Of a stretch of DNA of 64,000 nt, positions 9,048 to 63,182 are shown piece by piece (position 1 is the first letter of the stretch; each line of letters begins with the position of its first letter). Where the stretch lies: positions 124,001 to 188,000 of the IMG/VR virus record IMGVR_UViG_3300035703_000008; one strand, 5' to 3'. Both the position numbers and the translations under genes were made by a program. The notes beneath the pieces are model-generated. The model searched no databases. It was not told the origin of the DNA and saw only the letters and a list, made by a program, of their open reading frames with translations.

Positions 9048-9422
9048 TTAGACGAAGCTGGCTCTGCGTGTTTCTTGATCGAAAAAGATAGCCAAGCGTT
9101 CAGCAGTGCTGCTGGACACTACCTGCACCTGCAGTTCAATGAGTATGCCATTGTCCTGGGGATACACTGTGGCATCTGTGACAAACAAGCGTGGGTCTTG
9201 ACCTACCACACGCTGCAGTTCTTGCAGTATGGCTCGTTCGGTGTCAGGAGTCTGATTCTCAAACACATAGCTCCAGATCACGGTGCCATATTCGGGACGC
9301 CCGGGCAGACTGCCTTGCTGTATGCTCAAGGCGTTGGCCAAGTCGCGTTTGATCAAGGCAAAATCCGTGAGCGTGAATTTCTTGAACTGATCTATGGTGT
9401 TGAAGCCGATGAATGTGGTCAT
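9048..9422 (-). CDS. Baseplate wedge subunit, gp25-like
   Basis: 124 aa; LIKRDL.NAL..QQGS..GRPEYGT.IW..VFE and DPR motifs of the GPW/gp25 family. Confidence 0.85.
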   Translation of the reverse strand: MTTFIGFNTIDQFKKFTLTDFALIKRDLANALSIQQGSLPGRPEYGTVIWSYVFENQTPDTERAILQELQRVVGQDPRLFVTDATVYPQDNGILIELQVQVVSSSTAERLAIFFDQETRRASFV

Positions 9423-9426
9423 GCTT

Positions 9427-9434
9427 TATTTATA
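9427..9434 (-). promoter_or_regulatory. Late promoter TATAAATA, 4 nt before ATG
   Basis: Full T4 late consensus on the minus strand. Confidence 0.75.
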
Positions 9435-9436
9435 GG

Positions 9437-10825
9437 TCAGCTCTGCACACGGCTGCGCCACAGAGCTATGAGCTCTTTGTTGATGGCGCTGCGCTTTTGC
9501 AGAATGTTGATCAATCTTATTAGAGAGTCTGCATAAGGTTTGACATAAGCCGCAAGGTCGCTCACTCCCGGATTGGCCTGAGTGAATGCTATGATGGGAT
9601 CAATATACTTCTTTCGATTGTCATTGTAGAGCGACCTCACAGCTTGGTATTTGGCGTCATAGGCGTCGATCTCGGCCGTGGTAATGGCCGAGCCTAGATC
9701 GTCGAGACGTTTGGCTTCGGGCATGAGCGCATCGAATTGAGCATTGACTCCATCCAAGAAAACGATGGCTTCTTCGACCAATCGATCAAACTCGTCGCGC
9801 TTGTCAGCGTTGGGATCAGGCGCCGGAGCTTCGCGTTCCACGGGTCCATACTCAATGGGCGGCACTTTGGGATCATCCACGGCGGAATTCACTGCACTGT
9901 CTACACCGGCACGCTTCACGGTTTCCACAGCACCAGCGGGTGCTGTATCGATCTTGGGCAATTTGTTGGCAACTAGGTCAGCGGCCTGTTGTCCACCTTT
10001 GCAGATCCCGCCGATCTGATCAGCGATGTTGGGCGGTGCTTTGCCGGCTGCCCAGTCGGCCACGGCCTGTGGTCCCAGCTTGGCTGAACCTTGTACTAGG
10101 CCTGCCAGCTTGTCGGCGCTTTCCTTGCCCGAGGCCACGCCCAGGCTCTTGAGTTTGTCCAACCCTTGGCTCATGAGGTTGGTCTGCGTGGCTGCTTGTA
10201 TGTTGGTGTTTTTGAGGAATCCGTCAAGGTTGGTCACGCTGCTTTTGCCGGCCCACACAAACGGTGATGACAGCACTTTGTTGAGCTGTCGGTTTGAAGC
10301 CACTTGCTCGGGGGTGATGTCGCCGCCTTCGGCATTGATCTTTTCGGCTTCGGCTCTATCCTGGTCAGTGACCGTGGGGGTGCTGCCAAAACTGCTCACA
10401 GTGCCAGGCTTGACGAATCCCTGTTCTTCCAGTTGCTTGGGAGTGAGTCCAAACTGACCGATGCCTTTGGTGGCGCTTATGGCCGAAGCAGGCTGTGCCA
10501 CAGCGGCTGCGGCCTGTCCCAGCATGCCGGTGACCTGTTGTGGATTGAGAGAACCAATGCTTTTGGTGGCAGGAATCTGCTTGAGGACTTGTGCAGCATT
10601 CACGGGATTCTTTATGGGCAGATTGTCAAGTCCGGCCAAGGCCGCGGTGGCCTGCTTGGCAGCGCCGGTGGTACCGGCCAAAGCCTGTCCGATGCCAAGG
10701 TTTTTTAAAGCACCCGAGTTGAACTGTTGATCAAAGATCTTGCGTGCATCTGCTTCGGTGACTCCGTTGGCAGCCTTGACTTCGAACTTTTCGCCGTTGG
10801 GTCCAGTAAAACTATAGCTGGGCAT
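9437..10825 (-). CDS. Baseplate-associated virion protein, possible degenerate lysozyme-like domain
   Basis: 462 aa between gp5- and gp25-like genes, start overlaps upstream stop; central GIGQFG...L..QG.VK...W.GK..V..L..FL.N...Q segment. Confidence 0.55.
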   Translation of the reverse strand: MPSYSFTGPNGEKFEVKAANGVTEADARKIFDQQFNSGALKNLGIGQALAGTTGAAKQATAALAGLDNLPIKNPVNAAQVLKQIPATKSIGSLNPQQVTGMLGQAAAAVAQPASAISATKGIGQFGLTPKQLEEQGFVKPGTVSSFGSTPTVTDQDRAEAEKINAEGGDITPEQVASNRQLNKVLSSPFVWAGKSSVTNLDGFLKNTNIQAATQTNLMSQGLDKLKSLGVASGKESADKLAGLVQGSAKLGPQAVADWAAGKAPPNIADQIGGICKGGQQAADLVANKLPKIDTAPAGAVETVKRAGVDSAVNSAVDDPKVPPIEYGPVEREAPAPDPNADKRDEFDRLVEEAIVFLDGVNAQFDALMPEAKRLDDLGSAITTAEIDAYDAKYQAVRSLYNDNRKKYIDPIIAFTQANPGVSDLAAYVKPYADSLIRLINILQKRSAINKELIALWRSRVQS

Positions 10826-15890: not shown

Positions 15891-15893
15891 GGA

Positions 15894-16193: not shown

Positions 16194-17953
16194 TACCAGA
16201 ATCCTCCTTTGATGAGATCACCGTTGGCAAATTGCTTGAGGCTGAATTGTTTGCTGACTTGTTCGCGAGTCTGTATGGGCAGCAGGCGGATGCTGACTTC
16301 TAGTCGAGTAGGCACATAAGTGGGCGAGTTGGTGCCCAGGGTAGGCGGTGCTGGAGGTGTGGCCACTGCGCCTGGCTGTGCGTTAATGGAACTGAGGCGC
16401 TGTGTGACGGCATCAAACGGACCAGTGGTAGTGGTTTGGCGTATGCGTTTTTGCAGCAGTCCCGTGGAAGAGATATTGGGACTGCGAGCACGGATGTAGT
16501 CCACGTCCGCGGGTAGATTGTAGTTGAAGCTGGTGATCACGCAGGGATGCAGGTTGAACTGATACTCGCCCAGACCTTGTAGATATACCAAGGGCGGAGG
16601 TGTTCCGCGCTCGGCGTCCTGACCATAGAACATCTTGGTAGCTGATCGGAAAAAGTGTATCACTGCTAGGAGATATTCGGCTTCCTTGGTGTCCTGGGCT
16701 GTGAACGGACACTCGATGGAGATCTCTTCCACGGCGCTGCCTTGATAGAAATAGCCGCGATAGTTGCTGTGCGTGAGATCATAGGGCGTGTATTTTGCTG
16801 TGTAGGCTGTGCTGATTTGCGGAGTGTAAGGGAATACCACACCGTCGGTGTCTTTGAGCGGTTGCAGGATGCCAGGACTGGCAGCATTGTAGAGATAGGT
16901 ACTCAACGGTGCCAGTCTCAGCTTGACACGCCAGTCTCCGTCGTTGGCCTGTTTGCGTTGTTGTTGCAGCACGGCCTGGGCACGAGCACGATCCACAGCG
17001 GCCTGCTGTGCTGCGGCCTGCTCTTCTTGGAGTGCTTGCACATCAGCCAGGCTTTCAGTATTGGTGGGAGTTTCTCCGGGATCGGTCTGTGGATAGGCCG
17101 GGTCATCGTCCACGGGATTGTCTTCGGCCTGTCGCCCTTCTTCGGAGAGTCCAGCAGCGCTGGTCTCGGCTCCGTCTACTTCATAGGGATCAGGCTGCGC
17201 TGTGGGGTTGTCCTGGGCTTGGATATCTTCTTCAGAGATATCACCAGCACCGGCACCGTCTACTTCATACGGATCGGGCTGCGGCGTATCGTTGGCATCG
17301 GCCACAGAGAAATCCACGGGATCGTCTTCTTCGCCATAGGGAGATACACCGTCGGGCGTTCCTCCCAGGAATTCTGAATCAGGAACTTCGCCAGGATCGG
17401 TCTGTGTATAAGGACTGGGCTGATCTATGGGATTGTCTTGGGCCTGGATGTCCTCTTCGGCGATGTCGCCAGCACCGGCACCGTCTACTTCATACGGATC
17501 GGGCTGTGTGGCCGGAGGCGGTGTTGCTACCGAACTGCCCGGAACCGTGTTCTGGGCTTGCTCCTGTGCTGCCTGGCTGGCCGGTTCATTGGGTGTGTTT
17601 AGGGGAACTTCGTTGCCGCTGCCGGGCGGACGAGCCACTTCTTTGAGGATCTGATCATCGACGTAGCGTATGTTGTTCTGTGTTTCGGTGATCTGATTGT
17701 TGGTCTGGGTAAGAGCTTGGCGAGAACTGGAAATCTGGCGATCCAGGGCATCGGCTTCTTGTTCCAGGAGAATGCGCTGTGGATCAGCTGGCGGCAATCG
17801 CTCAATGTTGCGTTCAACCACATCCAGCTGATCTTCGTAGCGAAACACTTCGCTGCTCTGCGTGCGTGCCGTGGCCAGCAGACCATCTAGTCGAACTTGC
17901 AGCTCGGCTTTGGTGGCGTTGTAGCTGTTGATGGTTTCTGCTTGGGTGGCCAT
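16193..17953 (-). CDS. Tail tube initiator/baseplate protein (gp48/gp54-like) with long N-terminal extension
   Basis: C-terminal GVVFPYTPQI...THSNY...FTAQ...EA.YLLA..HF.RS.TKM.YG...GTPPP..L.G.G..F...P.VI.SF domain. Confidence 0.65.
   Translation of the reverse strand: MATQAETINSYNATKAELQVRLDGLLATARTQSSEVFRYEDQLDVVERNIERLPPADPQRILLEQEADALDRQISSSRQALTQTNNQITETQNNIRYVDDQILKEVARPPGSGNEVPLNTPNEPASQAAQEQAQNTVPGSSVATPPPATQPDPYEVDGAGAGDIAEEDIQAQDNPIDQPSPYTQTDPGEVPDSEFLGGTPDGVSPYGEEDDPVDFSVADANDTPQPDPYEVDGAGAGDISEEDIQAQDNPTAQPDPYEVDGAETSAAGLSEEGRQAEDNPVDDDPAYPQTDPGETPTNTESLADVQALQEEQAAAQQAAVDRARAQAVLQQQRKQANDGDWRVKLRLAPLSTYLYNAASPGILQPLKDTDGVVFPYTPQISTAYTAKYTPYDLTHSNYRGYFYQGSAVEEISIECPFTAQDTKEAEYLLAVIHFFRSATKMFYGQDAERGTPPPLVYLQGLGEYQFNLHPCVITSFNYNLPADVDYIRARSPNISSTGLLQKRIRQTTTTGPFDAVTQRLSSINAQPGAVATPPAPPTLGTNSPTYVPTRLEVSIRLLPIQTREQVSKQFSLKQFANGDLIKGGFW
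17244..17506 (-). repeat. Internal direct repeats encoding QPDPYEVDGAGAGDI(A/S)EEDIQAQDNP
   Basis: Identical 38-nt copies at 17244-17281 and 17469-17506; a third partial copy near 17170-17195. Confidence 0.85.
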
Positions 17954-17970
17954 GATCTATCCTTGTGCTT

Positions 17971-17976
17971 TATTTA
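17971..17976 (-). promoter_or_regulatory. Late promoter TAAATA heading the baseplate operon
   Basis: TAAATA, then AAGGA SD, then ATG at 17953. Confidence 0.7.
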
Positions 17977-18066: not shown

Positions 18067-18954
18067 TTGAGCACAACACCACCGCGAGTAAACTATCTCA
18101 ACAACCGTGATCTCCTCAAAGAGATCCATCTCAGCAAAAATACCTATTGCACATTCCGAGATCCCGTAACTGATCATCAATACGACATAATCTTGCCCTC
18201 GGTCACCAAGATCAACCAAAGAACCATAGCCGAGGCACGGAGGAATCGCGCAGCGCGACTTGCCCGAGAAAGTGGTGAAGAGGTCAACGAAAAACGCATC
18301 CCGCACACCGATCTTGTTTTCCGTGTCATGACCTGGGAACACATACCCCAGGCACCCAAGAAACAGCCCAAAACACAGGCCAAAAAGAAAAAGCTCGAAG
18401 ATATCCTAGGCTTTGAAGAGCTGCCCGACGAGGATCCCTTGGCAGATCTCGTCGAAGATATCGTCATCGATACCACTCATGTGCGTGTAAATTTCCCACC
18501 GTTTTGGCATTACCGACTCGACGAAGAAAAAACACCATTTGTGGTAGGCAAAAGCCATTGGCGCGGCGATCTCAGCACTGGGGAGTATTCCAGAGAGCAC
18601 GGTGAAATGACACGCAAACTGGCCATGATGTTCATGAAGCTGTGCGAACGCTATGCCACTCGATCAAACTGGCGCGGCTATACCTACAACGAAGAGATGC
18701 GTGGGCAAGCTCTGCTACAACTCAGCCAGATCGGTCTGCAGTTTGACGAATCAAAGAGCCAAAATCCCTTTGCCTACTACACCGCAGCCATTACCAACTC
18801 GTTTACACGGGTGCTCAACATCGAAAAGAAAAACCAAAATATCAGGGACGACATCTTGGAAATGAACGGACTCAATCCTTCGTGGACTCGTCAGTATGCC
18901 AATGCTGACCGTGGCATGATGAGTGGCCCTGTGACCATCGGTTCTGACGAGTGA
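18067..18954 (+). CDS. Late-transcription sigma factor, T4 gp55-like
   Basis: NYLNNRDLL, RSNWRGYTYNEEM, FDESKSQNPFAYYT....NSF.R.L..EKK motifs; upstream of gp47/gp46 as in T4. Confidence 0.9.
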   Translation: MSTTPPRVNYLNNRDLLKEIHLSKNTYCTFRDPVTDHQYDIILPSVTKINQRTIAEARRNRAARLARESGEEVNEKRIPHTDLVFRVMTWEHIPQAPKKQPKTQAKKKKLEDILGFEELPDEDPLADLVEDIVIDTTHVRVNFPPFWHYRLDEEKTPFVVGKSHWRGDLSTGEYSREHGEMTRKLAMMFMKLCERYATRSNWRGYTYNEEMRGQALLQLSQIGLQFDESKSQNPFAYYTAAITNSFTRVLNIEKKNQNIRDDILEMNGLNPSWTRQYANADRGMMSGPVTIGSDE

Positions 18955-25964: not shown

Positions 25965-25970
25965 TAAATA
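25965..25970 (+). promoter_or_regulatory. Late promoter TAAATA, 6 nt before ATG
   Basis: TAAATA-GATCCT-ATG, no SD. Confidence 0.65.
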
Positions 25971-25976
25971 GATCCT

Positions 25977-27230
25977 ATGAACGTTGACAAAAGCACTTTC
26001 TGTGCTGCTCCTTGGTTCCAAATCAAAAATACCACGCTTGGAAGTTACTGTAGCTGTTGCGAGATAGACCACGACAAAAGCACTTTCTCGGGCAACAAAG
26101 ATTTCGCTTGGCCCACGCATCTACCATCGCACTGGAACAACAGCGATTATGCTCGATACCTTAGGTCTGAGCTCACCAATGGTGTGCGTCTCCCCGAATG
26201 TCACAAGTGTTGGAGCAAAGAAGATGCTGGACAACAAAGTCTTCGACAAACTATCAATGACACCGTGGCTGGCAATCGACCTTTTGAATCTAGTTGGATG
26301 CAATCCTACTTTAGAAAAAAGCAAGATTACGAACATGATTTACTTTTGGCTGCCGATGTACAGGTCACCAATCTTTGCAACTTTGGCTGTGTGATGTGTG
26401 AGCCGGGTAGCAGCAGCCATCTCTATCGAAGATGGCGGAGAGATCAGGACCATCCGTTGATAAAAAAACAGTTGATGATCTTCCCCAACGGCTATCTTGA
26501 TCAGGTGAAAGAAACATACATCAACAGAAACAACTACGAGCTACTGCAACACGTGATAGATCAATCTCCGCGGTACTTGAAGATCATAGGCGGTGAGCCT
26601 TTGTTGGATCAGCAGTTGATGTCTGTGTTGTGCAATCAGCTTCCCGAAGTCAAATCAAAAATCAAACTTTACATCACTACCAATGGGAGCCAAGATCTCT
26701 GCCACGCACAACAACGGTTGTCGGGTTACCAGGAAATTTTTTGGGTAGTCAGTCTAGAGTCCACGGGCAAACTGCAGGACTATGTGAGAAAAGGCAGCGT
26801 ATGGTCCGAGATCGAGCACAACATTGACAGGTTTGTAAGCGAACACAGCAGTCAACACCTTTACATAGCCTATGTGATACAGAGTCTCACATTGGCTGGG
26901 CTGCCAACATTGTTGGAATGGGCCCAGCAACGCAACATTCCAGTGGCTACCAGTTTGCTGGCCAAACCTGAATTCATGGATGTTAGATCGTTGCCCACGG
27001 AGATGAAATCAAAGTTGATTGATCAATTGTCGCAGGCAACAAAGTATTCGATACCGCTGGAGATACAAAATCCAGCATCTGTCAATATTGCAGGGTTGTG
27101 CGAGCTCATCGGGCGCACCCAGTACGATAGATCTGCCATGTTGGATCTACGAGAGTGGTTGGATTGGTACGATCCCGACCAGCAATGGCGAGACATCATT
27201 CCCGAGTGGGCACCATATTTCTCGGAGTAA
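25977..27230 (+). CDS. Radical SAM protein with N-terminal SPASM/twitch-like Cys cluster
   Basis: FCAAPW..CSCC..ECHKCW..E, NLCNFGCVMC, GGEP, TTNG. Confidence 0.85.
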   Translation: MNVDKSTFCAAPWFQIKNTTLGSYCSCCEIDHDKSTFSGNKDFAWPTHLPSHWNNSDYARYLRSELTNGVRLPECHKCWSKEDAGQQSLRQTINDTVAGNRPFESSWMQSYFRKKQDYEHDLLLAADVQVTNLCNFGCVMCEPGSSSHLYRRWRRDQDHPLIKKQLMIFPNGYLDQVKETYINRNNYELLQHVIDQSPRYLKIIGGEPLLDQQLMSVLCNQLPEVKSKIKLYITTNGSQDLCHAQQRLSGYQEIFWVVSLESTGKLQDYVRKGSVWSEIEHNIDRFVSEHSSQHLYIAYVIQSLTLAGLPTLLEWAQQRNIPVATSLLAKPEFMDVRSLPTEMKSKLIDQLSQATKYSIPLEIQNPASVNIAGLCELIGRTQYDRSAMLDLREWLDWYDPDQQWRDIIPEWAPYFSE

Positions 27231-33592: not shown

Positions 33593-33605
33593 GGTTAAAT
33601 ATCGT

Positions 33606-40075: not shown

Positions 40076-40128
40076 GGTGGTTTCCTTTTGTTGTGTTTAT
40101 TTATGTTTGATACTGAGTAAATAGATGT

Positions 40129-41072: not shown

Positions 41073-41208
41073 AAAAATATTTATTCCTGGATTATTTTTC
41101 GTAAATCTATGTTAAATACTATCAACGTATTCTGCGTTTTATGCGGCGATTAATACCCACCGCGTACCGGATAGAACCCGGATCGGACTTCTTTTAAGGA
41201 GAAAACAA

Positions 41209-41774: not shown

Positions 41775-42383
41775 ATGACCGCATTTGTTCTTGGCAATGG
41801 TGTTAGTCGTAGGGGCATTGATGTCCACGATCTCTTACGGCATGGTGCTGTGTACGGCTGCAATGCCCTTTATCGTACAAGCACCCCCACGGTATTGGTA
41901 GCTACAGATCGACCCATCAGCGAAGAAATACAAGCATCGGGCTATGCAAAAAACAATCGGTTTTACACTCGCAGGCCCTTGCCAGGCACAGGGGCGCAGA
42001 AGGTTCCTGACTGCTATCGAGGATTCAGTTCAGGTCCCATTGCTGCTGGACTGGCAGCCATGGATCGACACAATCCTGTGATCTTGTTGGGTTTTGATCT
42101 TGGGCCCGATGCTGACGGTAGATTCAACAATGTCTATGCTGACACGGATTTTTACAAAAAAACCGGCGATCTCCCCACCTTCACAGGTAACTGGGTGCGT
42201 CAGCTGATCACGGTGGCACGGGACCATCCCGGTCAGAGATTCGTACGAGTTCATGGTGATACCACTGCGCGTGTCGCAGACTTTGATGCAGTACCAAACT
42301 GGTTGACAATGCCTATCTCTGACTTGATTTTGCTAATAAATAAGGGCAAAGGATCTCTGGATGAATACCTACAAAAACGTTAG
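41775..42383 (+). CDS. DUF115/Maf-like (GT-A-related) nucleotide-binding protein
   Basis: AFVLGNG.SR, YGCNALYR, LVATD, SSGP.A..LA, LLGFD. Confidence 0.6.
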   Translation: MTAFVLGNGVSRRGIDVHDLLRHGAVYGCNALYRTSTPTVLVATDRPISEEIQASGYAKNNRFYTRRPLPGTGAQKVPDCYRGFSSGPIAAGLAAMDRHNPVILLGFDLGPDADGRFNNVYADTDFYKKTGDLPTFTGNWVRQLITVARDHPGQRFVRVHGDTTARVADFDAVPNWLTMPISDLILLINKGKGSLDEYLQKR

Positions 42384-43727: not shown

Positions 43728-43756
43728 TCCCATAAATAAGGGATAAAGGGCCGCTG

Positions 43757-48162: not shown

Positions 48163-48318
48163 TTTTGCTGACCTGACTAAATAAAAACACAACATCAACG
48201 GTCGCAACGACCAAGCGTTCTCCCAAAAAATCCACTCTGTCTTTTTGCCAGGCACGAAGACTGATTTCCTATGATTTCGGTAAATATGCTGGATGCCCAT
48301 GGGGCGGGAGACTAAAAA

Positions 48319-51300
48319 ATGGCCGTGACACGAATTAATAATAATCAGATATCCGACGCATCGGCAGGTAATGCGTATGTGGGTATCAATGCTGCAGTTA
48401 AGCTGCAGGATTACTCGATCACCTCGGGTAAGATCTCTAACAACCTGACTTATGGTAGCGATCTTACTGTCGCAGGTAACCTTACTGTACAAGGTAACAC
48501 AACAACAATCGACACCGTTAACGTGGTCGTCGAAGATCCACTGCTGCTGCTTGCTGCTGCACAGACCGGATCGCCCACGCTGGACATTGGCTTTATTGGC
48601 AAGCGTGGTACCAGCGATAACATCGCGTTTGTCTGGGACGAAAGCGAAGGATTGTTTGCAGCCGCATTCACTTCTAGCGAAGTCACAAACACAACTATCA
48701 CTATCAACAGCTATGCCAGCGTGAAATCTCTGGATTCTGCTGTGACTGGAAATCTTTCGGTAACAGGAATCAGCACATTTACTGGCAATGTCACACTGGG
48801 CAACCTCTTTGTTGACGGTCAAAAAACCATTGATGTTGGCAACAGCATCATCGGCAATGTGCAGTATCCTGTGGCCAACACTGATGCTGCAACCAAGAAG
48901 TTTGTTCTCGACGAAACCAGCGGCGGCTTCTTTGTCACTGATGCAGCAAATGCCAGCCCCCAAGAAGTCAAAAAGGGCGAGTACCTTAGATTCCTTGGCA
49001 CCACTAATGAAGTCGACGTCGCAGTAGGCGCCACAGACAATGTTACAATCGGCTTGCCTGCTAATGTAACTATCAGCAACGACCTCACAGTCAACAACAA
49101 CGCCACTATCGAAGGCGAGATTTTTGCCAACGGCAACATCCTGGTATCTGTGGCTAATACTTACAGCCTGGGCAATGCTTCTCATCGTTTCAAGGATCTT
49201 TACCTCAGTGGCAACACACTGTATCTGGGCAATGTTGAGCTTTCCCAGACTACAACTGATCGTACCATCCCTGTTGTCACCATTTCTGCCAATGGCTCAG
49301 ACGCAGTAGCCAACGCTGAATCGTTTAACGCTTCCAATGCTGTCACAGCTGGCGGCAACGTTACTGGTGCCAATGTTATTGCTACAGCCAATGTCACTGC
49401 CACAGGCAACGTATCAGGTGGCAACGTATTGGCCACAGCAGGGCTGTATGGCGCTTCTTTGAGCGTGACTGGCAACATCGCAGGTGGAAACCTCAGTTCA
49501 GCTGGTATCATCACAGCAGTTGGTAACATCGCAGGTGGAAATCTTGCTGCTAGCGGTGCTATTGATGCCACAGGTAATGTCACAGCTGGCAACGTGATCA
49601 CAGTTGGTGTTGTAACTGCCACAGGCAACGTAACAGGTGGAAACCTGATCACAGCTGGTGCAGTGACTGCCACAGGCAACATCACAGCCACAGGCAATGT
49701 TGTAGGCGGAAACCTCGTAACAGCTGGAAACCTCGAAGCCAACAATGCTTCTATTGCTGGTTCGTTCAGTGCCAACAACCTTTCGGCAGTGAACAATGTC
49801 ACTGGCAACGTGATCACATCCAACACCAGCATCAACGGTCAGACCGTGGTAGCTTCTGGAAACGTCACAGCTGGTAACGTGATCTCCAGCGGTATCGTAA
49901 GTGCCACAGGCAACGTGAGCGGTGGAAACCTGACCACAGCTGGCCTCGTAAGTGCCACAGGCAACGTGAGCGGTGGAAACCTGACCACAGCTGGCCTCGT
50001 AAGTGCCACAGGCAACGTGAGCGGTGGAAACCTGACCACAACTGGTAAAGTGTCTGCTGCAACTGGTACATTCACTGGCGACGTTGACGTAGCTAATCTT
50101 TCTGCTTCTGGTACAGCCACAGTCACAGGCAATGTGCTGGCTGGTAACCTCAACACTGGTGGAAAAGTAGTGGCCACTGGCAACATTGACAGTTCCGCTC
50201 ATATTTCGGCAACAAACAGCATCACAGCTGGCGGTAACATCTCTGGTGGTAATATCAGTGCTTCGGGCACAATCGCTGCCACAGGCAATGTGTCAGGAGG
50301 TAACCTTACTACACTGGGCGCAGTAATAGCATCCGGTAACGTCACTGGTGACAATCTCTTTGGCGATGCACTGTTTGGCGTCACTGGCGACTTCAATATC
50401 TATGCACCTGCTGGTAACCACAGCATCATCCTTAATGCTACTGGTACAGGTACCATCGACGTTGGCAACGTCAGAATCACCACACTGGCTGAACCCAGCA
50501 ACGACAACGATGCCGCAACCAAAGGCTATGTTGACTCGGTAGCACAGGGTCTCGATGTCAAAGCTTCGGTGGTAGTTGCTACTACAGCACCTCTGCCTGC
50601 ATTTACCTATAACAACGGTAATGCTGGTGTTGGCGCTACAATCACAGCTTCTGCAGCTGGTAACCTCGAGATTGACGGTGTAACAGTATCCACTGGCGAT
50701 CGCGTGCTGATCAAGAACGAAACCGGTGCTGATGAGCCTTACAACGGTATCTACGTAGTGACCACAGCGGGTACACCCAGCGTACCGTTTGAACTGACAC
50801 GTTCCACAGACATGGACAACGGAAGCCCCAGCGGTGAGTTCCCTGGTGCGTTTACGTTTGTCGAAGAAGGTACAGTGAACTTTGATTCGGGCTGGGTATG
50901 TACTACCAACGCTCCAGTCACAGTGGGCACAACACCTATCACGTTCCAGCAGTTCTCGGGTGCAGGTTCGATCGTTGCTGGTAACGGTCTGGGCAAAACA
51001 GGTAGTACACTGTTCGTCAACGTTGACAACGATACCACAGCTATCGTAGCTGACAACGTGGTAGTTAAAGCAGGTGCTAACCTGGTAACTCCCAACATTG
51101 GCAACGCCACAGGTACCACACTCACACTCACAGGCAACGTAGTAGCTGGTAACGTCAACTCCAACGGCGCAGTCACAGCTGGAACAAGCGTCACAGCCAC
51201 AGGCAACATCAGCGGTGCTAACTTGTTGGCCAGTGGTTATGTAGCTGCTTCGGGCAACGTAAGCGGTGCTAACTTGTTGGCCAGTGGTTTTGTATCTGCC

Positions 51301-57212: not shown

Positions 57213-58573
57213 TATCTTCCTGGTGGTCTTGGGTTAGGCGGTAAGTTGCCACCTTGATCGCCGTTGTCGGCCAAGGGACGTAGTGCTTGACTGAGACTCT
57301 GCCGGCTGGGTATGTTGCCCATATCGGTGGTAGACACGGTGTATTCGTTGTTGACAAAACTGCTTCGCAGCGTCTGATTGCTGGGACCATTGGTGAGATT
57401 GGTACGCACCTTGTCCTCGATCTTGAGCCAACCACGTCCGTTGAAGCGAAACAAACGATTTGGGAAATAATCCAAGCGCAGGCAGTAGTCGCCTTCTTGT
57501 GGGTTGGTAGGAAAGCTCACGCCTGGCGTCACAGGCAGGCCATTTGGGGCTATGCCGTCGCCGGTGAGATAGCCCATGGTCCAACCATCGGCTCTTGGGG
57601 TTTGACTGGCATCAGCCACTCCTACTCCGGTGTAGTCTACAGTGGGTACAGTACCGTCCACTGTGGGACCTGCTGGATTGGCCGGTGTGCCATCGGGGTT
57701 GGTGGGGAATATGTAAAACTTCACAGTGTCGTAGCCACTGAGAGGAACTTCTACTTCGGCCTGTGCCAGTATGGCATCATTGATCTCAAGGTCTTTGTTG
57801 CGGGTGCTGGCCTTGTCAGCTATGGTAGTGGGGTTGGTGATCTCGCGCCAGTAGTTGGTGTCTGTGATGGGTGTGCCCACTGGCACATCTACACGGGCTT
57901 CGTAGTAGACATCTCCTTGATTCACTATGGTACCTGCAGGATAGAAGTTGCCTGGATCCCAGATGTTTTCAGGCATGAACGGCCGGTCGATGATTTCCTG
58001 GTACTCTTGTGCATTGACCATGGGTGTGGCTTTCACACGCCACAAATGGGGCAACCAAGTCTGCGAAAAACCTTCGCTGGCGAAAGCAGCATCTTGTACC
58101 ACATAATATTTGGGAAGAGCCCGGGTAATGGCAGCATTCAAGGGATTGGGATCTTTGAGATTTGGGACTTCGATCACATCGCCACTCATGATTTTCCTAC
58201 CAATGGTGTCGATCATGTTGTTGTAGTGGAATGTCATGAACAAGGTATCGTTGTTTAGGAACAGTCCAAATTGCGTGAGATCAAAGTCGATGTCCTGGAT
58301 CTGGTACACGGCTCGCATCTGGTACACATCGGGATCATAGGAACGATCTCGGTTTTCCAGCAGCAAGAGATCCTGTATGAACAACGGATTGCTTTCGTCA
58401 TAGACTGGCTGCGTGGCATCAGCGTTTCCGGGGTCATCGGGCAAGACTTTTGGGCCCAGATACTTGTGCAGATAGATGTCAACCCCGCCGACTTGATACA
58501 TTTCGGCGATAGTGCGATCAAAAAAACGGTAATCGTTGGTTTGTTGGGGTCGCCAAAGGCTCAATCTGGGCAT
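57212..58573 (-). CDS. Neck/head-closure protein, gp14-like
   Basis: DLLLLENRDR.Y, FDLTQFGLFL.ND, GRK.MSGDV.E.P; next to gp15-like gene; TAAATA 58581-58586. Confidence 0.7.
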   Translation of the reverse strand: MPRLSLWRPQQTNDYRFFDRTIAEMYQVGGVDIYLHKYLGPKVLPDDPGNADATQPVYDESNPLFIQDLLLLENRDRSYDPDVYQMRAVYQIQDIDFDLTQFGLFLNNDTLFMTFHYNNMIDTIGRKIMSGDVIEVPNLKDPNPLNAAITRALPKYYVVQDAAFASEGFSQTWLPHLWRVKATPMVNAQEYQEIIDRPFMPENIWDPGNFYPAGTIVNQGDVYYEARVDVPVGTPITDTNYWREITNPTTIADKASTRNKDLEINDAILAQAEVEVPLSGYDTVKFYIFPTNPDGTPANPAGPTVDGTVPTVDYTGVGVADASQTPRADGWTMGYLTGDGIAPNGLPVTPGVSFPTNPQEGDYCLRLDYFPNRLFRFNGRGWLKIEDKVRTNLTNGPSNQTLRSSFVNNEYTVSTTDMGNIPSRQSLSQALRPLADNGDQGGNLPPNPRPPGR

Positions 58574-58595
58574 AGTCTTGTATTTAGCGGCAAGG

Positions 58596-58624
58596 TTGAC
58601 TCAAAATTCCAGTTTTGCTAAAAT
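58596..58624 (+). promoter_or_regulatory. Sigma70-type promoter
   Basis: TTGACT-17nt-TAAAAT with TG extension; ATG 5 nt downstream. Confidence 0.7.
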
Positions 58625-58629
58625 ACACT

Positions 58630-58902
58630 ATGACTTTGGAAAACTGGCATGAACTAGATCGCCGTTTGACCCAGGCAAAAAATGCCTATCTCAGTGTGAA
58701 CACAGGTACCATGGATCTTTTCCGCATGCACCGCGCTGCCAGTAGGCTACTACAACAGGCCAACTCTGAGTGGGTCAACTGTAGACATCGTGGACAGGGC
58801 AGTGCTAGATTTGATCATTTGCTGACAGAAGCTGAACAAGTCATAAAGAATTTTGAAGGTCATTGCATGTTGGCTAAACTAATGCACAAGGAGCAGAGAT
58901 GA
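58630..58902 (+). CDS. Hypothetical protein
   Basis: ATG 58630 directly after the promoter; ATGA overlap with next gene. Confidence 0.65.
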   Translation: MTLENWHELDRRLTQAKNAYLSVNTGTMDLFRMHRAASRLLQQANSEWVNCRHRGQGSARFDHLLTEAEQVIKNFEGHCMLAKLMHKEQR

Positions 58903-60047
58903 ACGCTGTGGCACACAAACCCATCAAGACATTGATGCCAAAAACCGCGGATGTAAAATACACCGGGCCTGAACCCGAATGGCGCACCCAACCCGATAGC
59001 GACAATCGCAACAGCCGCCTGGGAGCAGGGTTTTACTGGTATGGATACCATTACGGCAAAAAGGAAGTGAAAGAATTCATCATTGATTGGCTTGTCCGCA
59101 ACGATCGACCAGCAGAAGCCAAAGAATTCGCCAGGGTGCCCGAATCTGCTGTGCCCAACGTGTATGGTTGGTTGGCTCGCATGAATCTCCGAGGTCTGCA
59201 ACTCAACGATCACGAGCTGCTCAAGCTCAACGATGAGATCAAGTCACATCTCAGTTCTGTACGAGCAGTCAAGGAAGTGGTCAGTAAACCCGAGGAAGCG
59301 GTGGCAGCTCGACCCACGATCCAGGATCGACTACGAGAGAAGATGTTGGAAGCGGCTGGTGAACTCGAAGGCATGTATGACGCCATGATCCAGGCCGGTG
59401 CCAAGATGAGCGCCGATTACAAACCTATCACGGTTCTGCGTGGCGTGAACGTGGCTCCACAACTCACGTCAGAAATCGTCCAGCAGTGGCGAGCTCGACT
59501 CGATGAGCTCGAGCTGGTCATTGAGGGCAAAGACGCACAGCTAGTGGAAGGGTATGGCAATTTTGGCAAGCTGCAACTGCGGAATCTAGTCAAGTTCTGC
59601 GAGCAGGTCATCTCTGACTGCGGCAGTTATGTACAGATCAAGAAGACCGAGCGTGCTCCACGCAAGAAAAAGCCAGTGAGCCCTGAAAAGCTCACAGCCA
59701 AATTCAAGTATCTACGAGAATTTGACGAACTCAAACTGGTCAGTGAACCTGTGACCAAACTGGTTGGCGCCCAAGAGGCCTGGTTGTACGACACCAAGAA
59801 ACGCAAGCTGATCTATGTGGTAGCCGACACGCATGCTGGGTCGTTTACCGTGAAAGGGTCTGCGATCATTGGCTTTGACACCACCAACTCTGTTCAGAAG
59901 ACCTTGCGTAAGCCACCCGAGCAGATTCCGGCATTGTTGAAGGGCGGAGTAGCTCAGCATCGCCGGTATTTCAAAGATATCCGGGCCACCGAAGTCAAAT
60001 TCAACGGTCGTGGAAACGAGAACTTGGTACTGTTAAAGATCCGCTAA
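58899..60047 (+). CDS. Hypothetical protein (early/middle)
   Basis: 382-aa ORF with typical codon use; no family recognised. Confidence 0.75.
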   Translation: MNAVAHKPIKTLMPKTADVKYTGPEPEWRTQPDSDNRNSRLGAGFYWYGYHYGKKEVKEFIIDWLVRNDRPAEAKEFARVPESAVPNVYGWLARMNLRGLQLNDHELLKLNDEIKSHLSSVRAVKEVVSKPEEAVAARPTIQDRLREKMLEAAGELEGMYDAMIQAGAKMSADYKPITVLRGVNVAPQLTSEIVQQWRARLDELELVIEGKDAQLVEGYGNFGKLQLRNLVKFCEQVISDCGSYVQIKKTERAPRKKKPVSPEKLTAKFKYLREFDELKLVSEPVTKLVGAQEAWLYDTKKRKLIYVVADTHAGSFTVKGSAIIGFDTTNSVQKTLRKPPEQIPALLKGGVAQHRRYFKDIRATEVKFNGRGNENLVLLKIR

Positions 60048-60069
60048 ATACTGGGGCAAGGAGCCCCAA

Positions 60070-60831
60070 ATGGCAGATCAAACGCTGGACCCACTCAAGA
60101 AACGACTCATTGAATATGTGCAGCTACAGCTCGGTGATCAGATCGTCGACATCGAGCTGGACCCGGCTCATTACGAAGCTGCATATCAACGCACGTTAGG
60201 TGTGTATCGTCAACGAGCGCAAAATGCCTACGAAGAAAGCTACAGTTTTCTCAAGCTCTTGGACAATGTCAACGAGTATGTTCTACCACAAGAGGTAAGC
60301 CAGGTCCGTAATATCTATCGCAGAAACATCGGACTAGGCACTGGCGGTACCGGCAGTAGTTTTGATCCCTTCGCGCAGGCAGCCATGAACATCTATCTCC
60401 TGGCCTATGATCAGGCTGGTGGATTGGCCACTTACGACTTTTACAATCAGTATGTGGAACTAGCGGCTCGCATGTTTGGTGGGTACATCAACTACACATG
60501 GAATCCAGTGACCAAGAAGCTGCAACTCATACGTGATCCACGCGGATCTGGAGAAGTAGTTCTGCTATGGACCTACAACCTCAGACCCGAGATCGTGCTC
60601 CTGAGCGATCATCAGATCAGCCAATGGATACGAGATCACATGGTGGGTGCTGCCAAATACATCATCGGCGAAGCTCGAGAAAAGTTCGCATCGATCGCAG
60701 GACCACAAGGCGGGTCGACACTGAATGGTGCTGCTATGAAAGCCGAAGGTCAGGCCATGATGGACCGTTGTGTGGAAGATCTCAAACTTTATGTGGATGG
60801 AAGTCAGCCCCTGACTTTCGTGATAGGCTGA
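60070..60831 (+). CDS. Neck protein, T4 gp13-like
   Basis: LIEYV.L.LG..IVDIELD, IGEAREKF..I.GP.GG.TLNG..MK.E; TAAATA 60045-60050. Confidence 0.85.
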   Translation: MADQTLDPLKKRLIEYVQLQLGDQIVDIELDPAHYEAAYQRTLGVYRQRAQNAYEESYSFLKLLDNVNEYVLPQEVSQVRNIYRRNIGLGTGGTGSSFDPFAQAAMNIYLLAYDQAGGLATYDFYNQYVELAARMFGGYINYTWNPVTKKLQLIRDPRGSGEVVLLWTYNLRPEIVLLSDHQISQWIRDHMVGAAKYIIGEAREKFASIAGPQGGSTLNGAAMKAEGQAMMDRCVEDLKLYVDGSQPLTFVIG

Positions 60832-61109
60832 TGCGAGCCAGCGAATTCATCGACGAGCACCGCATGGTTTGGCGCCGCAATCCTCGGACTGGTAAAGTCA
60901 CTCTACGGTGGCGTTGCGAATCGGGTTGGAGGAAAAATCGCACAGTGCCAGCAGTCAGCGATTGTGGTAAAGCCCCAGACATCGCGCAGGCACAGCAAAT
61001 GAAACGCACTCGTGCCAAGACCAAAATCCGGCAAGCCCGAAGGACCAAGCGTACCAAACGAGTGAATCCATCTAGTAAATTGGCACAAAGACTCAACAAG
61101 AGTCGCTAG
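60831..61109 (+). CDS. Small highly basic protein (possible internal head/DNA-binding protein)
   Basis: TGATG overlap with gp13-like stop; MRASEFIDE then R/K-rich. Confidence 0.65.
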   Translation: MRASEFIDEHRMVWRRNPRTGKVTLRWRCESGWRKNRTVPAVSDCGKAPDIAQAQQMKRTRAKTKIRQARRTKRTKRVNPSSKLAQRLNKSR

Positions 61110-61135
61110 ACTTTTTCAAAAAAATCAGCTATACT
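61107..61135 (+). promoter_or_regulatory. Sigma70-type promoter
   Basis: TAGACT-17nt-TATACT; ATG 6 nt downstream. Confidence 0.6.
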
Positions 61136-61141
61136 ACCAGC

Positions 61142-61672
61142 ATGGCTGATATCATGATTGACATCGAAACCTGCGGCACCGGACCCGACGCCTGCATCCT
61201 TACTATCGCGGCACAGTGCTTTGATCCCTTGAATCGACACGAGTTTGGCGAATATCGCAGCTACTATGCCAGGATCGATCCTGGTAGCCAACCCAATCGC
61301 AGTGTGCAGGATGAAACCATCGCTTGGTGGGCGACCCAGCCTCCCGAAGCCCAAGAGGAAGCATTTGGCGAAGACAATCGTATACCATTGAAACAAAGCC
61401 TGGAAGAGTTGGGCAAGTTGATCTGGCAAAGCAAACGATTCTGGGCCAACGGTCCCACATTTGATGCCAACATACTCGAGCATGCCTACAAAGAAGCTGG
61501 TATGGCCCTGCCCTGGAAATTTTTCGTGGTCAGAGATGCTCGCACAGTGTATGGGCTATGTCCCACCCTTGACAAGTATCCAGCCAGCCATCATGCCCTA
61601 GAGGATTGCCGCAGGCAGATCTATCTACTCTGGGACAGCCTAGAAACACTCAAAGTAAAGGAATTGGTGTGA
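61142..61672 (+). CDS. 3'-5' exonuclease (DEDDh, DexA/ExoVIII-like)
   Basis: MIDIET, WANGPTFD, RDART, HHALED. Confidence 0.88.
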   Translation: MADIMIDIETCGTGPDACILTIAAQCFDPLNRHEFGEYRSYYARIDPGSQPNRSVQDETIAWWATQPPEAQEEAFGEDNRIPLKQSLEELGKLIWQSKRFWANGPTFDANILEHAYKEAGMALPWKFFVVRDARTVYGLCPTLDKYPASHHALEDCRRQIYLLWDSLETLKVKELV

Positions 61673-62160
61673 ACTTTTTCATTGACATGGATGATGTGGT
61701 AGCTGACTGGCGTGCGCAGGCCCAGACCTTTCTGGGCATCGAATGGGACCGAGAATCCAACGAACGCATTCCGCAAACAGACTGGGATCGACTCACCCAG
61801 AATGAGAGATTCTACCTGGATCTCCCAGTTCGTGAAGGCGCCACTGAACTCATGTCTTGGATGACAAAGAGACAGCGCAGCACCGGCGATGGAGTATTCT
61901 TCCTCACAGCAATACCACACGATTACAGCATGCCCTATGCGGCCCAAGACAAGGTCTGGTGGGCATATCGATATTTTCCCGATGTTCCTGTGTTTTTTGG
62001 ACCATTTAGCCACGACAAATGGCGACATTGCTGCCCCGGCGATGTTCTCATCGACGATCGGTCCAGCAACTGCGGAGAATGGACTTCGGCAGGAGGGCGT
62101 GCCCATGTGTATCGAGATTGGGCATCATGCAAACTCTGGCTCGAGGAGACACTGGCATGA
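61669..62160 (+). CDS. 5'(3')-deoxyribonucleotidase-like HAD hydrolase
   Basis: IDMDDVVADW, FLTA, K..W, LIDDR..N..EW...GG; GTGA overlap start. Confidence 0.82.
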   Translation: MNFFIDMDDVVADWRAQAQTFLGIEWDRESNERIPQTDWDRLTQNERFYLDLPVREGATELMSWMTKRQRSTGDGVFFLTAIPHDYSMPYAAQDKVWWAYRYFPDVPVFFGPFSHDKWRHCCPGDVLIDDRSSNCGEWTSAGGRAHVYRDWASCKLWLEETLA

Positions 62161-62792
62161 TTATTGGAGTTTGCGGCCTCATCGGTGCCGGCAAAGACAC
62201 AGTGGCCGACTATCTAGTCAACGTACACGAGTTTCGCAGGGATAGTTTTGCAGCCACACTCAAAGATGCCGTGAGTGCTGTGTTTGGCTGGGATCGTGAC
62301 ATGCTGGAAGGACGCACTAAAAGCAGCCGGGAATGGCGGGAACAGGTAGATCCATGGTGGAGCCAACGCCTGGGAATACCGCAACTGTCGCCTCGCTGGG
62401 TACTACAGCAGTGGGGAACCAATGTGCTTAGACAAGGTTTCCACGATGACATCTGGATCGCTAGCGTGGAGAACAAGATAAGGAATTCCTCTGATGATGT
62501 GGTGATATCTGACTGTAGATTCCCCAATGAGATTGATGCCATACGCAGTGCCGGCGGCATAGTAGTACGTGTGGTAAGGGGCAAAGATCCCAGCTGGTTT
62601 GACCAGGCCCGCAGCCATCTGATGTCAGGCAATGATTTACCCGATGATGCTCCGCACTCCAGCGAGTGGGCCTGGGCTGCCACTGAATTTGACTATATCG
62701 TTGACAACAACGGCAGCATGGATGAGCTTTATATCCAGCTCAACGATCTGGTTCGATGTCTCCGGGTCGCCAAGGTAGATCCAGCTTTGTGA
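62157..62792 (+). CDS. Deoxynucleoside monophosphate kinase, T4 gp1-like
   Basis: IIGVCGLIGAGKDT, SFA..LKD, PR..LQ..GT, ISDCRFPNE, HSSE. Confidence 0.9.
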   Translation: MIIGVCGLIGAGKDTVADYLVNVHEFRRDSFAATLKDAVSAVFGWDRDMLEGRTKSSREWREQVDPWWSQRLGIPQLSPRWVLQQWGTNVLRQGFHDDIWIASVENKIRNSSDDVVISDCRFPNEIDAIRSAGGIVVRVVRGKDPSWFDQARSHLMSGNDLPDDAPHSSEWAWAATEFDYIVDNNGSMDELYIQLNDLVRCLRVAKVDPAL

Positions 62793-63084
62793 TCTCTTCG
62801 ATGCAGTTGAGGCACACAGTTTTAAGATTTCTCAGTTCACAGTCGTTGAGATCACCGTTGACATGATATACCACGAGTTGAGTTCGGTATCTTGCTATGA
62901 AGCCACATCGATCGCATGTGGCTTTCTTTTTATATCCTGCTAGTTCCCAACGTGGTTTGGGCTTCTTGAGATTCTTCCCGCGCCTAATACAGGACGAACA
63001 CCGGCTACGATAGTAGATTTTGCCACGATGATATCCATTGATGGCAGCGAGATTTTTACCACAGACTTGACATAAAGGACGCAT
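62740..63084 (-). CDS. Zinc-finger HNH-like protein
   Basis: CQVC, CSSC, CDRC, YHVNGDLND....NLKTVCLNC; TAAATA 63090-63095. Confidence 0.75.
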   Translation of the reverse strand: MRPLCQVCGKNLAAINGYHRGKIYYRSRCSSCIRRGKNLKKPKPRWELAGYKKKATCDRCGFIARYRTQLVVYHVNGDLNDCELRNLKTVCLNCIEEITKLDLPWRPGDIEPDR

Positions 63085-63182
63085 AGCGGTATTTAGCGAC
63101 GCGGACCTTAATTAAGGCACCTGTTCACGGCATTTTTTTGGCTCACCAATAAATATGCTTAACCATTAAAAAGGATGAAAAT

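What the first reader, a model, noticed from the sequence alone, without database searches (positions are those of the whole stretch)
9419..63095. Pervasive leaderless transcripts: promoter -10 elements sit 4-7 nt from the ATG
Seen: TAAATA-to-ATG spacing with no SD is 4 nt (9422 gp25-like; 33606 portal), 5 nt (35405, 40129, 41072, 63084), 6 nt (25977) and 7 nt (58573). Sigma70-type -10 boxes are 5-6 nt from ATG at 58630 and 61142. High-copy proteins (capsid, 41209, sheath) keep leaders with SD. Known: T4 late transcripts start about 6 nt after TATAAATA. Inference: these mRNAs begin at or next to the AUG, giving a two-tier leaderless/SD expression scheme and a hint about host type.
Basis: partly seen in the sequence, partly recalled or inferred. 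Interest (0 to 1): 0.6.

Follow-up and report, generated by a model that had tools for sequence, protein, structure and literature searches.

The report
Late promoters abutting start codons
In this uncultured freshwater jumbo phage and its close relatives, about a tenth of the genes have a T4-type late promoter box (TAAATA) only 4-8 bases before the ATG, so their mRNAs almost certainly start at the start codon with no ribosome-binding leader; T4 and four cultured relatives lack this layout.

Summary
The window is part of a 209-kb IMG/VR contig, about 60% of a jumbo myovirus related to PA5oct and RaK2, and it encodes a gp55-like late sigma factor. TAAATA is the commonest hexamer upstream of gene starts. 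Its distance to the ATG falls into two classes. Twenty-two sites lie at 4-8 nt (mode 5), against 1.9 +/- 1.4 expected; most have no Shine-Dalgarno (SD) sequence. No sites lie at 9-16 nt. Seventeen sites lie at 17-23 nt, and 14 of them carry an SD. In T4 numbering the box ends at -6, so a 5-nt spacer puts the A of ATG at +1. Sigma70-like -35/-10 pairs also abut ATGs, with a mode of 6 nt, as expected for a box ending at -7. Two near-complete relatives show the same pattern, and orthologues keep their class. The portal gene in 60 relatives is either short without SD or long with SD, never in between. T4, PA5oct, Vibrio phage 2.275.O, Serratia phage BF and Sinorhizobium phage Phosso lack the short class. 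No transcription start site (TSS) data exist, so leaderless mRNA remains a strong inference, not a demonstration. The link to protein copy number is only a tendency, and the host is unknown.

The parts
18067..18954 (+). gp55-like late sigma factor gene (295 aa, TTG start), preceded by a sigma70-like TTGACA-17-TATACT promoter and an AGGAG leader
   Evidence: phrog_12791 'sigma factor for late transcription', E 2.4e-76, and phrog_234, E 1.6e-24; upstream sequence
9422..9434 (-). TATAAATA (9434-9427), 4 nt, then ATG 9422 of the gp25-like baseplate wedge gene (9048-9422). The whole gap after the upstream gene's TGA is 14 nt, with no SD
   Evidence: phrog_43; orthologues in G002 and G004 have spacings of 7 and 5 nt
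25965..25979 (+). TAAATA, 6 nt, then ATG 25977 of a radical SAM protein (417 aa); no SD and no alternative in-frame start
33596..33608 (+). TAAATA, 4 nt, then ATG 33606 of the portal gene (596 aa); no SD
   Evidence: In 60 distinct relatives' upstream contexts the portal box is short without SD (22) or long (17, of which 13 have SD), and never at 9-15 nt
35394..35407 (+). TAAATA, 5 nt, then ATG 35405 of a 72-aa protein (phrog_13986). The TAA of the box is the portal gene's stop codon
   Evidence: orthologues in G002 and G004 both have a 5-nt spacing
40118..40131 (+). TAAATA, 5 nt, then ATG 40129 (201 aa, unknown), the first gene of a rightward unit in a 53-nt divergent gap
40073..40103 (-). 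Long-class partner in the same divergent gap: TAAATA (40103-40098), 22 nt with AAGGA, then ATG 40075
41070..41083 (-). TAAATA (41083-41078), 5 nt, then ATG 41072 (113 aa, unknown), the first gene of a leftward unit
   Evidence: orthologues in G002 and G004 both have a 5-nt spacing
58571..58586 (-). TAAATA (58586-58581), 7 nt, then ATG 58573 of a virion structural protein (453 aa)
   Evidence: The G002 orthologue has a 19-nt spacing, the one class switch seen
58596..58632 (+). Sigma70-like promoter TTGACT-17-TAAAAT with an upstream TG (10 of 12 matches), 5 nt, then ATG 58630 (90-aa ORF)
61107..61144 (+). Sigma70-like promoter TAGACT-17-TATACT (9 of 12 matches), 6 nt, then ATG 61142 (176 aa, exonuclease-like)
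63082..63095 (-). TAAATA (63095-63090), 5 nt, then ATG 63084 of an HNH endonuclease (114 aa), in a divergent gap
63150..63185 (+). Long class: TAAATA, 27 nt with AAGGA, then ATG 63183 of the tail sheath gene
8997..9024 (-). Long class: TAAATA (9024-9019), 19 nt, then ATG 8999 of a gp6-like baseplate wedge gene (1170 aa)
17951..17976 (-). Long class: TAAATA, 17 nt with AAGGA, then ATG 17953 of a virion structural protein (586 aa)
42337..42363 (+). Long class: TAAATA, 18 nt with AAGGA, then ATG 42361
43733..43759 (+). Long class: TAAATA, 18 nt with AAGG, then ATG 43757 (692 aa, phrog_8578)
60045..60072 (+). Long class: TAAATA, 19 nt with AGGAG, then ATG 60070 of the head-tail adaptor gene
35689..35728 (+). 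Long class: TAAATA, 31 nt with GGAGG, then ATG 35726, the head of the operon that runs to the capsid gene
48281..48321 (+). Long class: TAAATA, 32 nt with GGAG, then ATG 48319 (2119-aa protein with a head-decoration-like domain)

Best explanation
TAAATA is the -10-type late promoter of this phage. Host RNA polymerase carrying the phage's gp55-like sigma reads it, as T4 gp55 reads TATAAATA. Polymerase geometry places the start about 6 nt after the box. The phage uses the box in two layouts. In the first, the box lies 4-8 nt (mode 5) before the ATG, so the transcript begins at or within about 2 nt of the AUG. That mRNA has no SD and must be translated as a leaderless mRNA. In the second, the box lies at least about 17 nt before the ATG, which is just enough room for a minimal leader carrying an SD. 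Leaders of 3-10 nt would be too long for leaderless initiation and too short to hold an SD, and they are avoided. Early-type sigma70 promoters follow the same logic. The layout of each gene is conserved within a large uncultured freshwater clade and is absent from T4 and from cultured relatives. Shown: the motif, its spacing statistics, the missing SD, the sigma gene, and conservation. Inferred: the TSS position, 70S-type leaderless translation, and any effect on expression level or timing.
For: 1. TAAATA is the top hexamer in the 40 nt before 203 crude gene starts: 39 hits, 21 at 4-8 nt and none at 9-16 nt. 2. There are 22 short-class sites against 1.94 +/- 1.39 expected. 3. In the short class 18 of 22 have no SD-like sequence at all, and the weak matches in the other four lie at or upstream of the box. 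Seventeen of 22 have no alternative in-frame start, and about half have no co-directional ORF ending within 60 nt upstream, so a promoter must lie there. In the long class 14 of 17 have an SD 6-10 nt from the ATG. 4. A gp55-like sigma is encoded in the window. In T4 the first T of TATAAATA is at -13 (PMC2988020), so the box ends at -6 and a 5-nt spacer puts the A of ATG at +1. Five nt is the observed mode. 5. Strong sigma70-like -35/-10 pairs peak at 6 nt in G002 (8 sites) and G004 (4 sites), and occur at 5 and 6 nt in this genome. This fits a box that ends at -7. 6. The long class is A-rich at the 5th to 7th nt after the box, while TAAATA copies not linked to genes are not. 7. ATG dominates at 4-8 nt, and GTG and TTG are at background level. 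8. G002 (344 kb) and G004 (316 kb) show the same two classes: 30 and 24 short sites against about 3 expected. 9. Orthologues at 55-76% amino-acid identity keep the short class in 15 of 16 cases although the spacer sequence differs, and long-class genes stay long. 10. Portal upstream regions in 60 distinct relatives: 22 short without SD, 17 long (13 with SD), none at 9-15 nt. 11. T4, PA5oct, Vibrio phage 2.275.O, Serratia phage BF and Phosso (GC 0.49, the same as here) have no short class.
Against: There is no transcript 5' end for this phage or any clade member. The only public run holding related DNA gave assembled contigs of an 85-90% identical relative, which cannot show starts. T4's co-activator gp33 and clamp gp45 were not detected with their PHROG profiles, but the built-in control search also found nothing, so late transcription may differ from T4 in detail. 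Only the 6-bp core is conserved; the two positions that are TA in T4 vary here. The short-class spacing overlaps the usual SD-to-ATG spacing, so a role in translation cannot be excluded from sequence alone. Several short-class boxes share their TAA with the upstream gene's stop codon. My gene calls are crude, and 3-5 of the 22 short sites may lie inside ORFs.
Confidence: 0.75

Rival explanations
1. At the short spacing TAAATA is not a promoter. It would be an SD substitute: an A/U-rich element on polycistronic mRNA that recruits ribosomes (for example through S1 or a phage-altered 30S subunit) at the usual SD position. It would act as a promoter only at the long spacing.
For: A spacing of 4-8 nt is the normal SD-to-ATG spacing. 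About half of the short-class genes follow a co-directional gene closely. More than half of the crude gene starts lack a clear SD, so SD-independent initiation is common in this genome. Relatives G002-G004 encode ribosomal protein bS21, which sits at the anti-SD site.
Against: One hexamer would need two unrelated functions. This does not explain why full -35/-10 sigma70-like pairs also abut ATGs, or why their mode is 6 nt rather than 5. It does not explain the short-class genes that head divergent units with no other promoter-like motif in gaps of 53-98 nt. It does not explain the near-exclusive use of ATG.
Confidence: 0.12
2. The real start codons lie further downstream, so the transcripts have ordinary leaders and the adjacent ATG is a coincidence.
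For: My gene calls are crude. A few short-class ATGs lie in frames that stay open far upstream, for example genome positions 16788, 79383 and 200385.
Against: The portal N-terminus (M-x-W-K) aligns from residue 1-2 across 80 relatives. The same ATG carries an SD in relatives with the long layout. Orthologue alignments place the start at offset 0 in most cases. The ATG enrichment is specific to 4-8 nt.
Confidence: 0.05
3. The pattern is a compositional by-product: TAA stop codons and A/T-rich short gaps between genes place TAAATA near ATGs by chance.
For: In 4-5 of the 22 short sites the box's TAA is the upstream gene's stop codon.
Against: The other 14 A4T2 hexamers give 0-8 sites against 22. 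Random placement gives 1.9. The 9-16 nt zone is empty. Phosso has the same GC content and lacks the peak. The class is conserved in orthologues.
Confidence: 0.03

Closest known systems
T4 late promoters (TATAAATA read by gp55, with gp33 and the gp45 clamp)
   Same: A gp55-family sigma is encoded. The box is a TAAATA core at the -10 position with no -35 element, in front of virion genes on both strands. The long-class layout (box, short leader, SD, ATG) is the T4 layout.
   Different: In T4 all 32 TATAAATA copies lie at least 13 nt from a long-ORF ATG (mode 28), with no short class. Here about half of the gene-linked boxes lie 4-8 nt from the ATG. Only the 6-bp core is conserved. gp33 and gp45 homologues were not detected.
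Late-promoter-like ATAAATA motif of RaK2-like jumbo phages (CBB, GAP32) and relatives PA5oct, Serratia BF, Vibrio 2.275.O and Phosso
   Same: This is the same wider lineage: the capsid protein is 63-66% identical and the same gp55-like sigma family is present. The CBB paper reports an ATAAATA motif before structural genes, a gp55-like sigma, and no gp33 or gp45 (PMC5259590).
   Different: The four relatives I scanned (PA5oct, BF, 2.275.O, Phosso) carry the box 16-38 nt upstream and have no 4-8 nt class. Neither the CBB nor the PA5oct paper mentions leaderless transcripts.
Thermus phages phiYS40 and Lalka27a
   Same: In these phages most transcripts are leaderless, with the initiator codon at the 5' end and -10 elements close to it. 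This includes late promoters with a phage-specific -10 box (bioRxiv 10.64898/2026.04.20.719267). Functionally this is the nearest known parallel.
   Different: The phages are unrelated and the promoter consensus differs (TAGGGT). The Thermus paper reports most transcripts as leaderless; here only a conserved subset of genes is predicted to be, beside SD-led genes, and no start sites have been mapped.
Classical leaderless phage mRNAs (lambda cI from PRM; mycobacteriophage genes)
   Same: Transcription starts at the A of the AUG, there is no SD, and AUG is required (my own knowledge; PMC4633059 for mycobacteria).
   Different: Lambda cI is a single regulatory gene. The mycobacteriophage cases come from leaderless-rich actinobacterial hosts. 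Neither is a gp55-type late promoter class covering about 10% of a jumbo phage's genes.

Membership tests
T4-type (gp55-dependent) late promoter system | Phage encodes a gp55-family late sigma factor | tested here: met
   Window 18067-18954 matches phrog_12791 (E 2.4e-76) and phrog_234 (E 1.6e-24), the PHROG families that T4 gp55 itself matches
T4-type (gp55-dependent) late promoter system | TATAAATA-like box without a -35 element in front of late (virion) genes | tested here: met
   TAAATA is the top upstream hexamer and lies before the portal, sheath, tube, wedge and adaptor genes. Only the 6-bp core is conserved and the two upstream positions vary
T4-type (gp55-dependent) late promoter system | Co-activator gp33 | tested here: inconclusive
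   phrog_254 found nothing in G000-G004, and the tool's control search also found nothing. G000 is only about 60% complete. CBB also lacks a detectable gp33 (PMC5259590)
T4-type (gp55-dependent) late promoter system | T4-type sliding clamp gp45 acting as a mobile enhancer | tested here: inconclusive
   phrog_223 found nothing in G000-G004, and the control search also found nothing
T4-type (gp55-dependent) late promoter system | Transcription starts about 6 nt after the box | not testable with these tools
   No RNA 5' ends are available. Indirect support: A-rich 5th-7th nt after the box in the long class, and a mode of 5 nt in the short class
Leaderless mRNA | Primary 5' end at, or within a few nt of, the A of the AUG | not testable with these tools
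   Inferred from the 4-8 nt spacing between box and ATG and from T4 promoter geometry (PMC2988020). Not measured
Leaderless mRNA | No Shine-Dalgarno sequence upstream of the start | tested here: met
   18 of 22 short-class sites have no SD-like sequence. The weak matches in the other four lie at or upstream of the box
Leaderless mRNA | AUG used as start codon | tested here: met
   At 4-8 nt there are 22, 30 and 24 ATG sites in own, G002 and G004, against 2, 2 and 4 GTG sites and 0, 3 and 1 TTG sites. The GTG and TTG counts match non-start control triplets

The most novel reading that the evidence does not exclude
The clade may run a dedicated translation programme. Leaderless late (and some early) mRNAs would make translation depend on initiation at one particular promoter, so that read-through transcripts carrying the same AUG internally stay silent. 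The phage may also retune host ribosomes towards such mRNAs, for example through the bS21 encoded by relatives G002-G004 or an unrecognised factor. That would amount to a phage-driven switch between SD-led and leaderless translation.
Probability: 0.12. Interest if true: 0.85.

Novelty: new variant of a known kind. Interest (0 to 1): 0.58.

Why it matters
If start-site mapping confirms it, this would be the first T4-superfamily lineage in which gp55-type late promoters routinely produce leaderless mRNAs. It would come with a clean rule for leader length: either no leader or one of about 12 nt or more carrying an SD. The rule gives an easy sequence signature for finding leaderless translation in uncultured phages and for guessing properties of unknown hosts. 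It helps correct start-codon and promoter annotation in jumbo-phage metagenomes. It also offers a compact promoter-plus-start cassette (TAAATA-N5-ATG) for testing how leaderless initiation sets protein dosage and timing during infection.

Tried and rejected
1. A megablast search of the portal-capsid block against GenBank phages found no match. The nearest cultured relatives are only 63-66% identical in the capsid protein.
2. RNA evidence was not obtainable. One lake-water run labelled 'RNA-Seq' held 5% of the sampled words. Laying it gave 13 contigs, all under 95% identical (9 of them under 90%), from a relative. They carry no start-site information and there is no proof they are RNA.
3. Profile searches for gp33 and gp45 found nothing, but the controls were also silent, so the result is inconclusive.
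4. Host inference failed. There is no psbA. The bS21 of relatives is nearest to Cyanobacteria and Melainabacteria at only 48-64% identity over about 45-60 residues, in a scan biased by its search patterns. This is too weak to name a host. The published bS21 freshwater phages have GC 31-34% and predicted Bacteroidetes hosts, so they appear to be a different group (PMC9723584).
5. I looked for an extended consensus around TAAATA and found only a weak C preference 3-4 nt upstream.
6. Low GC as a cause was rejected, because Phosso has the same GC content and lacks the short class.
7. Stop-codon overlap as a cause was rejected, because it applies to only 4-5 of the 22 sites.
8. Literature searches for 'leaderless' together with gp55, late promoter or jumbo phage found no report of this arrangement in T4-like phages. 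The library lacks most subscription journals.


Full report
WHAT THE WINDOW IS. The window is bases 124,001-188,000 of a single 208,932-bp linear IMG/VR viral contig with GC 0.50. CheckV rates the contig about 60% complete. It carries a T4-superfamily virion module: portal, capsid, gp25-like and gp6-like baseplate wedge proteins, tail sheath and head-tail adaptor. The tail tube gene lies elsewhere on the contig. The capsid protein is 63-66% identical to those of jumbo phages PA5oct, Vibrio phage 2.275.O, Sinorhizobium phage Phosso and the RaK2-like Serratia phage BF. No nucleotide-level match exists among GenBank phages. Window 18067-18954 encodes a gp55-like late sigma factor (phrog_12791, E 2.4e-76). 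A sigma70-like TTGACA-17-TATACT promoter and an AGGAG leader precede that gene.

THE OBSERVATION. TAAATA is over-represented in the window, with 25 copies against 13.2 +/- 3.4 in shuffles. In the whole contig it is the single commonest hexamer within 40 nt upstream of 203 crude gene starts, called without reference to the motif: 39 hits out of 81 genomic copies. The distance from the end of the box to an ATG opening an ORF of at least 60 codons falls into two classes. There are 22 sites at 4-8 nt (5, 10, 3, 3 and 1 sites at 4, 5, 6, 7 and 8 nt), none at 9-16 nt, and 17 at 17-23 nt. Random placement of 81 motifs gives 1.94 +/- 1.39 sites at 4-8 nt, with a maximum of 7 in 2,000 trials. The other 14 hexamers of composition A4T2 give 0-8 sites at 3-8 nt.

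THE TWO CLASSES DIFFER AS A LEADERLESS/LEADERED MODEL PREDICTS. In the short class, 18 of 22 sites have no SD-like sequence, and the four weak matches lie at or upstream of the box. Seventeen of 22 have no alternative in-frame start codon. About half have no co-directional ORF ending within 60 nt upstream, so they head transcription units. Examples are the divergent gaps at 40076-40128, 41073-41208, 58574-58629 and 63085-63182. In the long class, 14 of 17 sites carry AGGA, GGAG or AAGGA 6-10 nt before the ATG. ATG is used almost exclusively at 4-8 nt, with GTG and TTG at the level of control triplets. In the long class the 5th to 7th nt after the box are 47-53% A, against 17-25% for TAAATA copies not linked to genes. 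This is what a purine start about 6 nt after the box would produce.

GEOMETRY. In T4 the first T of TATAAATA is numbered -13 (PMC2988020). The box therefore ends at -6, and the sixth base after it is +1. A 5-nt spacer, the observed mode, puts the A of ATG exactly at +1. Spacers of 4-8 nt give 5' ends between about -1 and +4 relative to the A. There is an independent check. Stringent sigma70-like -35/-10 pairs, whose -10 hexamer ends at -7, also abut long-ORF ATGs, and their mode is 6 nt: 8 sites in relative G002 and 4 in G004. In this contig such pairs occur at 5 nt (ATG 58630) and 6 nt (genome position 47082), and a slightly weaker pair lies 6 nt before ATG 61142. The one-base offset between the two promoter types is what 'A of ATG = +1' predicts. 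It is hard to explain if the short-spaced element were a ribosome-binding signal.

CONSERVATION AND PHYLOGENETIC RANGE. A portal-based scan of IMG/VR found more than 599 related contigs; the best 80 have 71-83% portal identity. Pooled over about 1 Mb of these loci, TAAATA-to-ATG spacings are 13, 68, 5, 22 and 3 at 4-8 nt, with three sites in total at 9-15 nt and a broad second mode from 16 nt upward. Two near-complete relatives, G002 (343,632 bp) and G004 (315,778 bp), show the same two classes genome-wide: 30 and 24 short sites against about 3 expected. Orthologues of this phage's short-class genes, at 55-76% amino-acid identity, keep a 4-7 nt spacing in 15 of 16 cases, although the spacer sequence and exact length differ. 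Long-class genes stay long. Among 60 distinct upstream contexts of the portal gene, 22 are short without SD and 17 are long (13 with SD). None lies at 9-15 nt. In most of the remaining 21 the box is replaced by TAAGTA, which I saw at both short and long spacings.

By contrast, T4 has its TATAAATA boxes at 13 nt or more, with a mode of 28. PA5oct, Vibrio phage 2.275.O and Serratia phage BF, and Phosso with GC 0.49, have no short class although each encodes the same sigma family. In an unbiased count of hexamers 3-9 nt before first ATGs, TAAATA ranks first or second beside SD hexamers in this clade only.

WHICH GENES ARE IN WHICH CLASS. Short-class genes include the portal, the gp25-like wedge protein, two radical SAM proteins, a 2OG-Fe(II) oxygenase, a metallophosphoesterase, an HNH endonuclease, two virion structural proteins and several unknowns. 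Long-class SD-led genes include the tail sheath, tail tube, gp6-like wedge protein, head-tail adaptor, a 2,119-aa protein with a head-decoration-like domain, virion proteins and three endonucleases. The capsid gene and the gene at 41209 have strong AAGGAG sites.

MECHANISM PROPOSED. Host RNA polymerase carrying the gp55-like sigma initiates about 6 nt after TAAATA. Where the ATG sits there, the mRNA is leaderless and presumably enters translation through its 5'-terminal AUG. Elsewhere a minimal leader of about 12 nt or more carries an SD. Leaders of 3-10 nt serve neither route and are selected against. One plausible consequence, which is inference only, is that a short-class gene is translated only from transcripts started at its own promoter and not from read-through RNA. 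That would tighten temporal control and set low dosage.

WHAT IS NOT SHOWN. No 5' end has been mapped. The one public run holding similar sequence is a lake-water library kept as contigs. It contains a relative under 95% identical (mostly under 90%), which says nothing about starts or even about RNA. gp33 and gp45 were not detected, but the searches had silent controls. The host is unknown. There is no psbA. The bS21 gene present in G002-G004 but not in G000 or G001 resembles cyanobacterial and melainabacterial S21 only weakly.

COMPARISON WITH THE LITERATURE. An ATAAATA late-promoter-like motif and a gp55-like sigma, without gp33 or gp45, are reported for RaK2-like phage CBB, and the motif also for GAP32 (PMC5259590). 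The PA5oct paper lists only sigma70-like motifs (PMC7318152). Neither paper mentions leaderless transcripts. Pervasive leaderless transcription with phage-specific late -10 boxes is documented for Thermus phages phiYS40 and Lalka27a. Searches combining 'leaderless' with gp55, late promoter or jumbo phage found no report for T4-like phages, though the library is incomplete. I therefore rate this a new variant of a known kind: a known promoter type and a known translation mode, combined in a conserved, clade-specific, rule-like way.

VERDICT. The leaderless interpretation is very likely (about 0.75) but unmeasured. The copy-number tiering is partial, and the host hint is plausible but unresolved.

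Noticed in passing
G004:C1:73431-73643 (L087:13731-13943), G002:C1:38906-39061, G003:C1:175131-175283: Three near-complete relatives encode ribosomal protein bS21 (PF01165, E about 1e-17, above the curated cut-off). In G004 it lies directly after a ClpX-like ATPase gene. It is absent from this 209-kb fragment and from the 99%-complete relative G001. The nearest bacterial S21 sequences are cyanobacterial or melainabacterial at only 48-64% identity.
   Followed up: partly
L010, L028, L031, L041, L045-L048, L050-L058 (upstream of the portal gene): A sub-clade replaces TAAATA with TAAGTA (as ATAAGTA) before the portal gene. I saw it both 7 nt before the ATG and about 24 nt before it. This suggests a co-varying change in the specificity of the late sigma.
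   Followed up: partly
window 41113-41208: A rightward TAAATA at 41113 lies 90 nt before the SD-led ATG 41209. This is an unusually long leader for this genome and could hold a regulatory RNA structure.
   Followed up: no
window 61142-61672 and 62740-63084: The 176-aa ORF at 61142 matches only the middle of an exonuclease family (positions 180-355 of the 436 in phrog_255). An HNH endonuclease gene lies about 1 kb downstream on the opposite strand. The exonuclease gene may be split or interrupted by a mobile element.
   Followed up: no
window 25977-27230 and genome 201120-202268: Two radical SAM domain proteins (phrog_14086) are both expressed from short-class TAAATA boxes 6 nt before the ATG. 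The matches I found in G002 and G004 are only 22-33% identical and lack the box.
   Followed up: partly
whole contig (crude gene set): By a simple test for 4 or more SD bases, 116 of 203 crude gene starts lack an SD. Many of them sit 3-4 nt after a TAA stop (recurrent CTAATC(C)ATG), which suggests widespread stop-start coupling beside the leaderless class.
   Followed up: partly
window 20850-20870: A TACAAT -10-like hexamer lies 5 nt before ATG 20868 (463 aa) with no SD. This may be a further sigma70-type leaderless start that my stringent scan missed.
   Followed up: no
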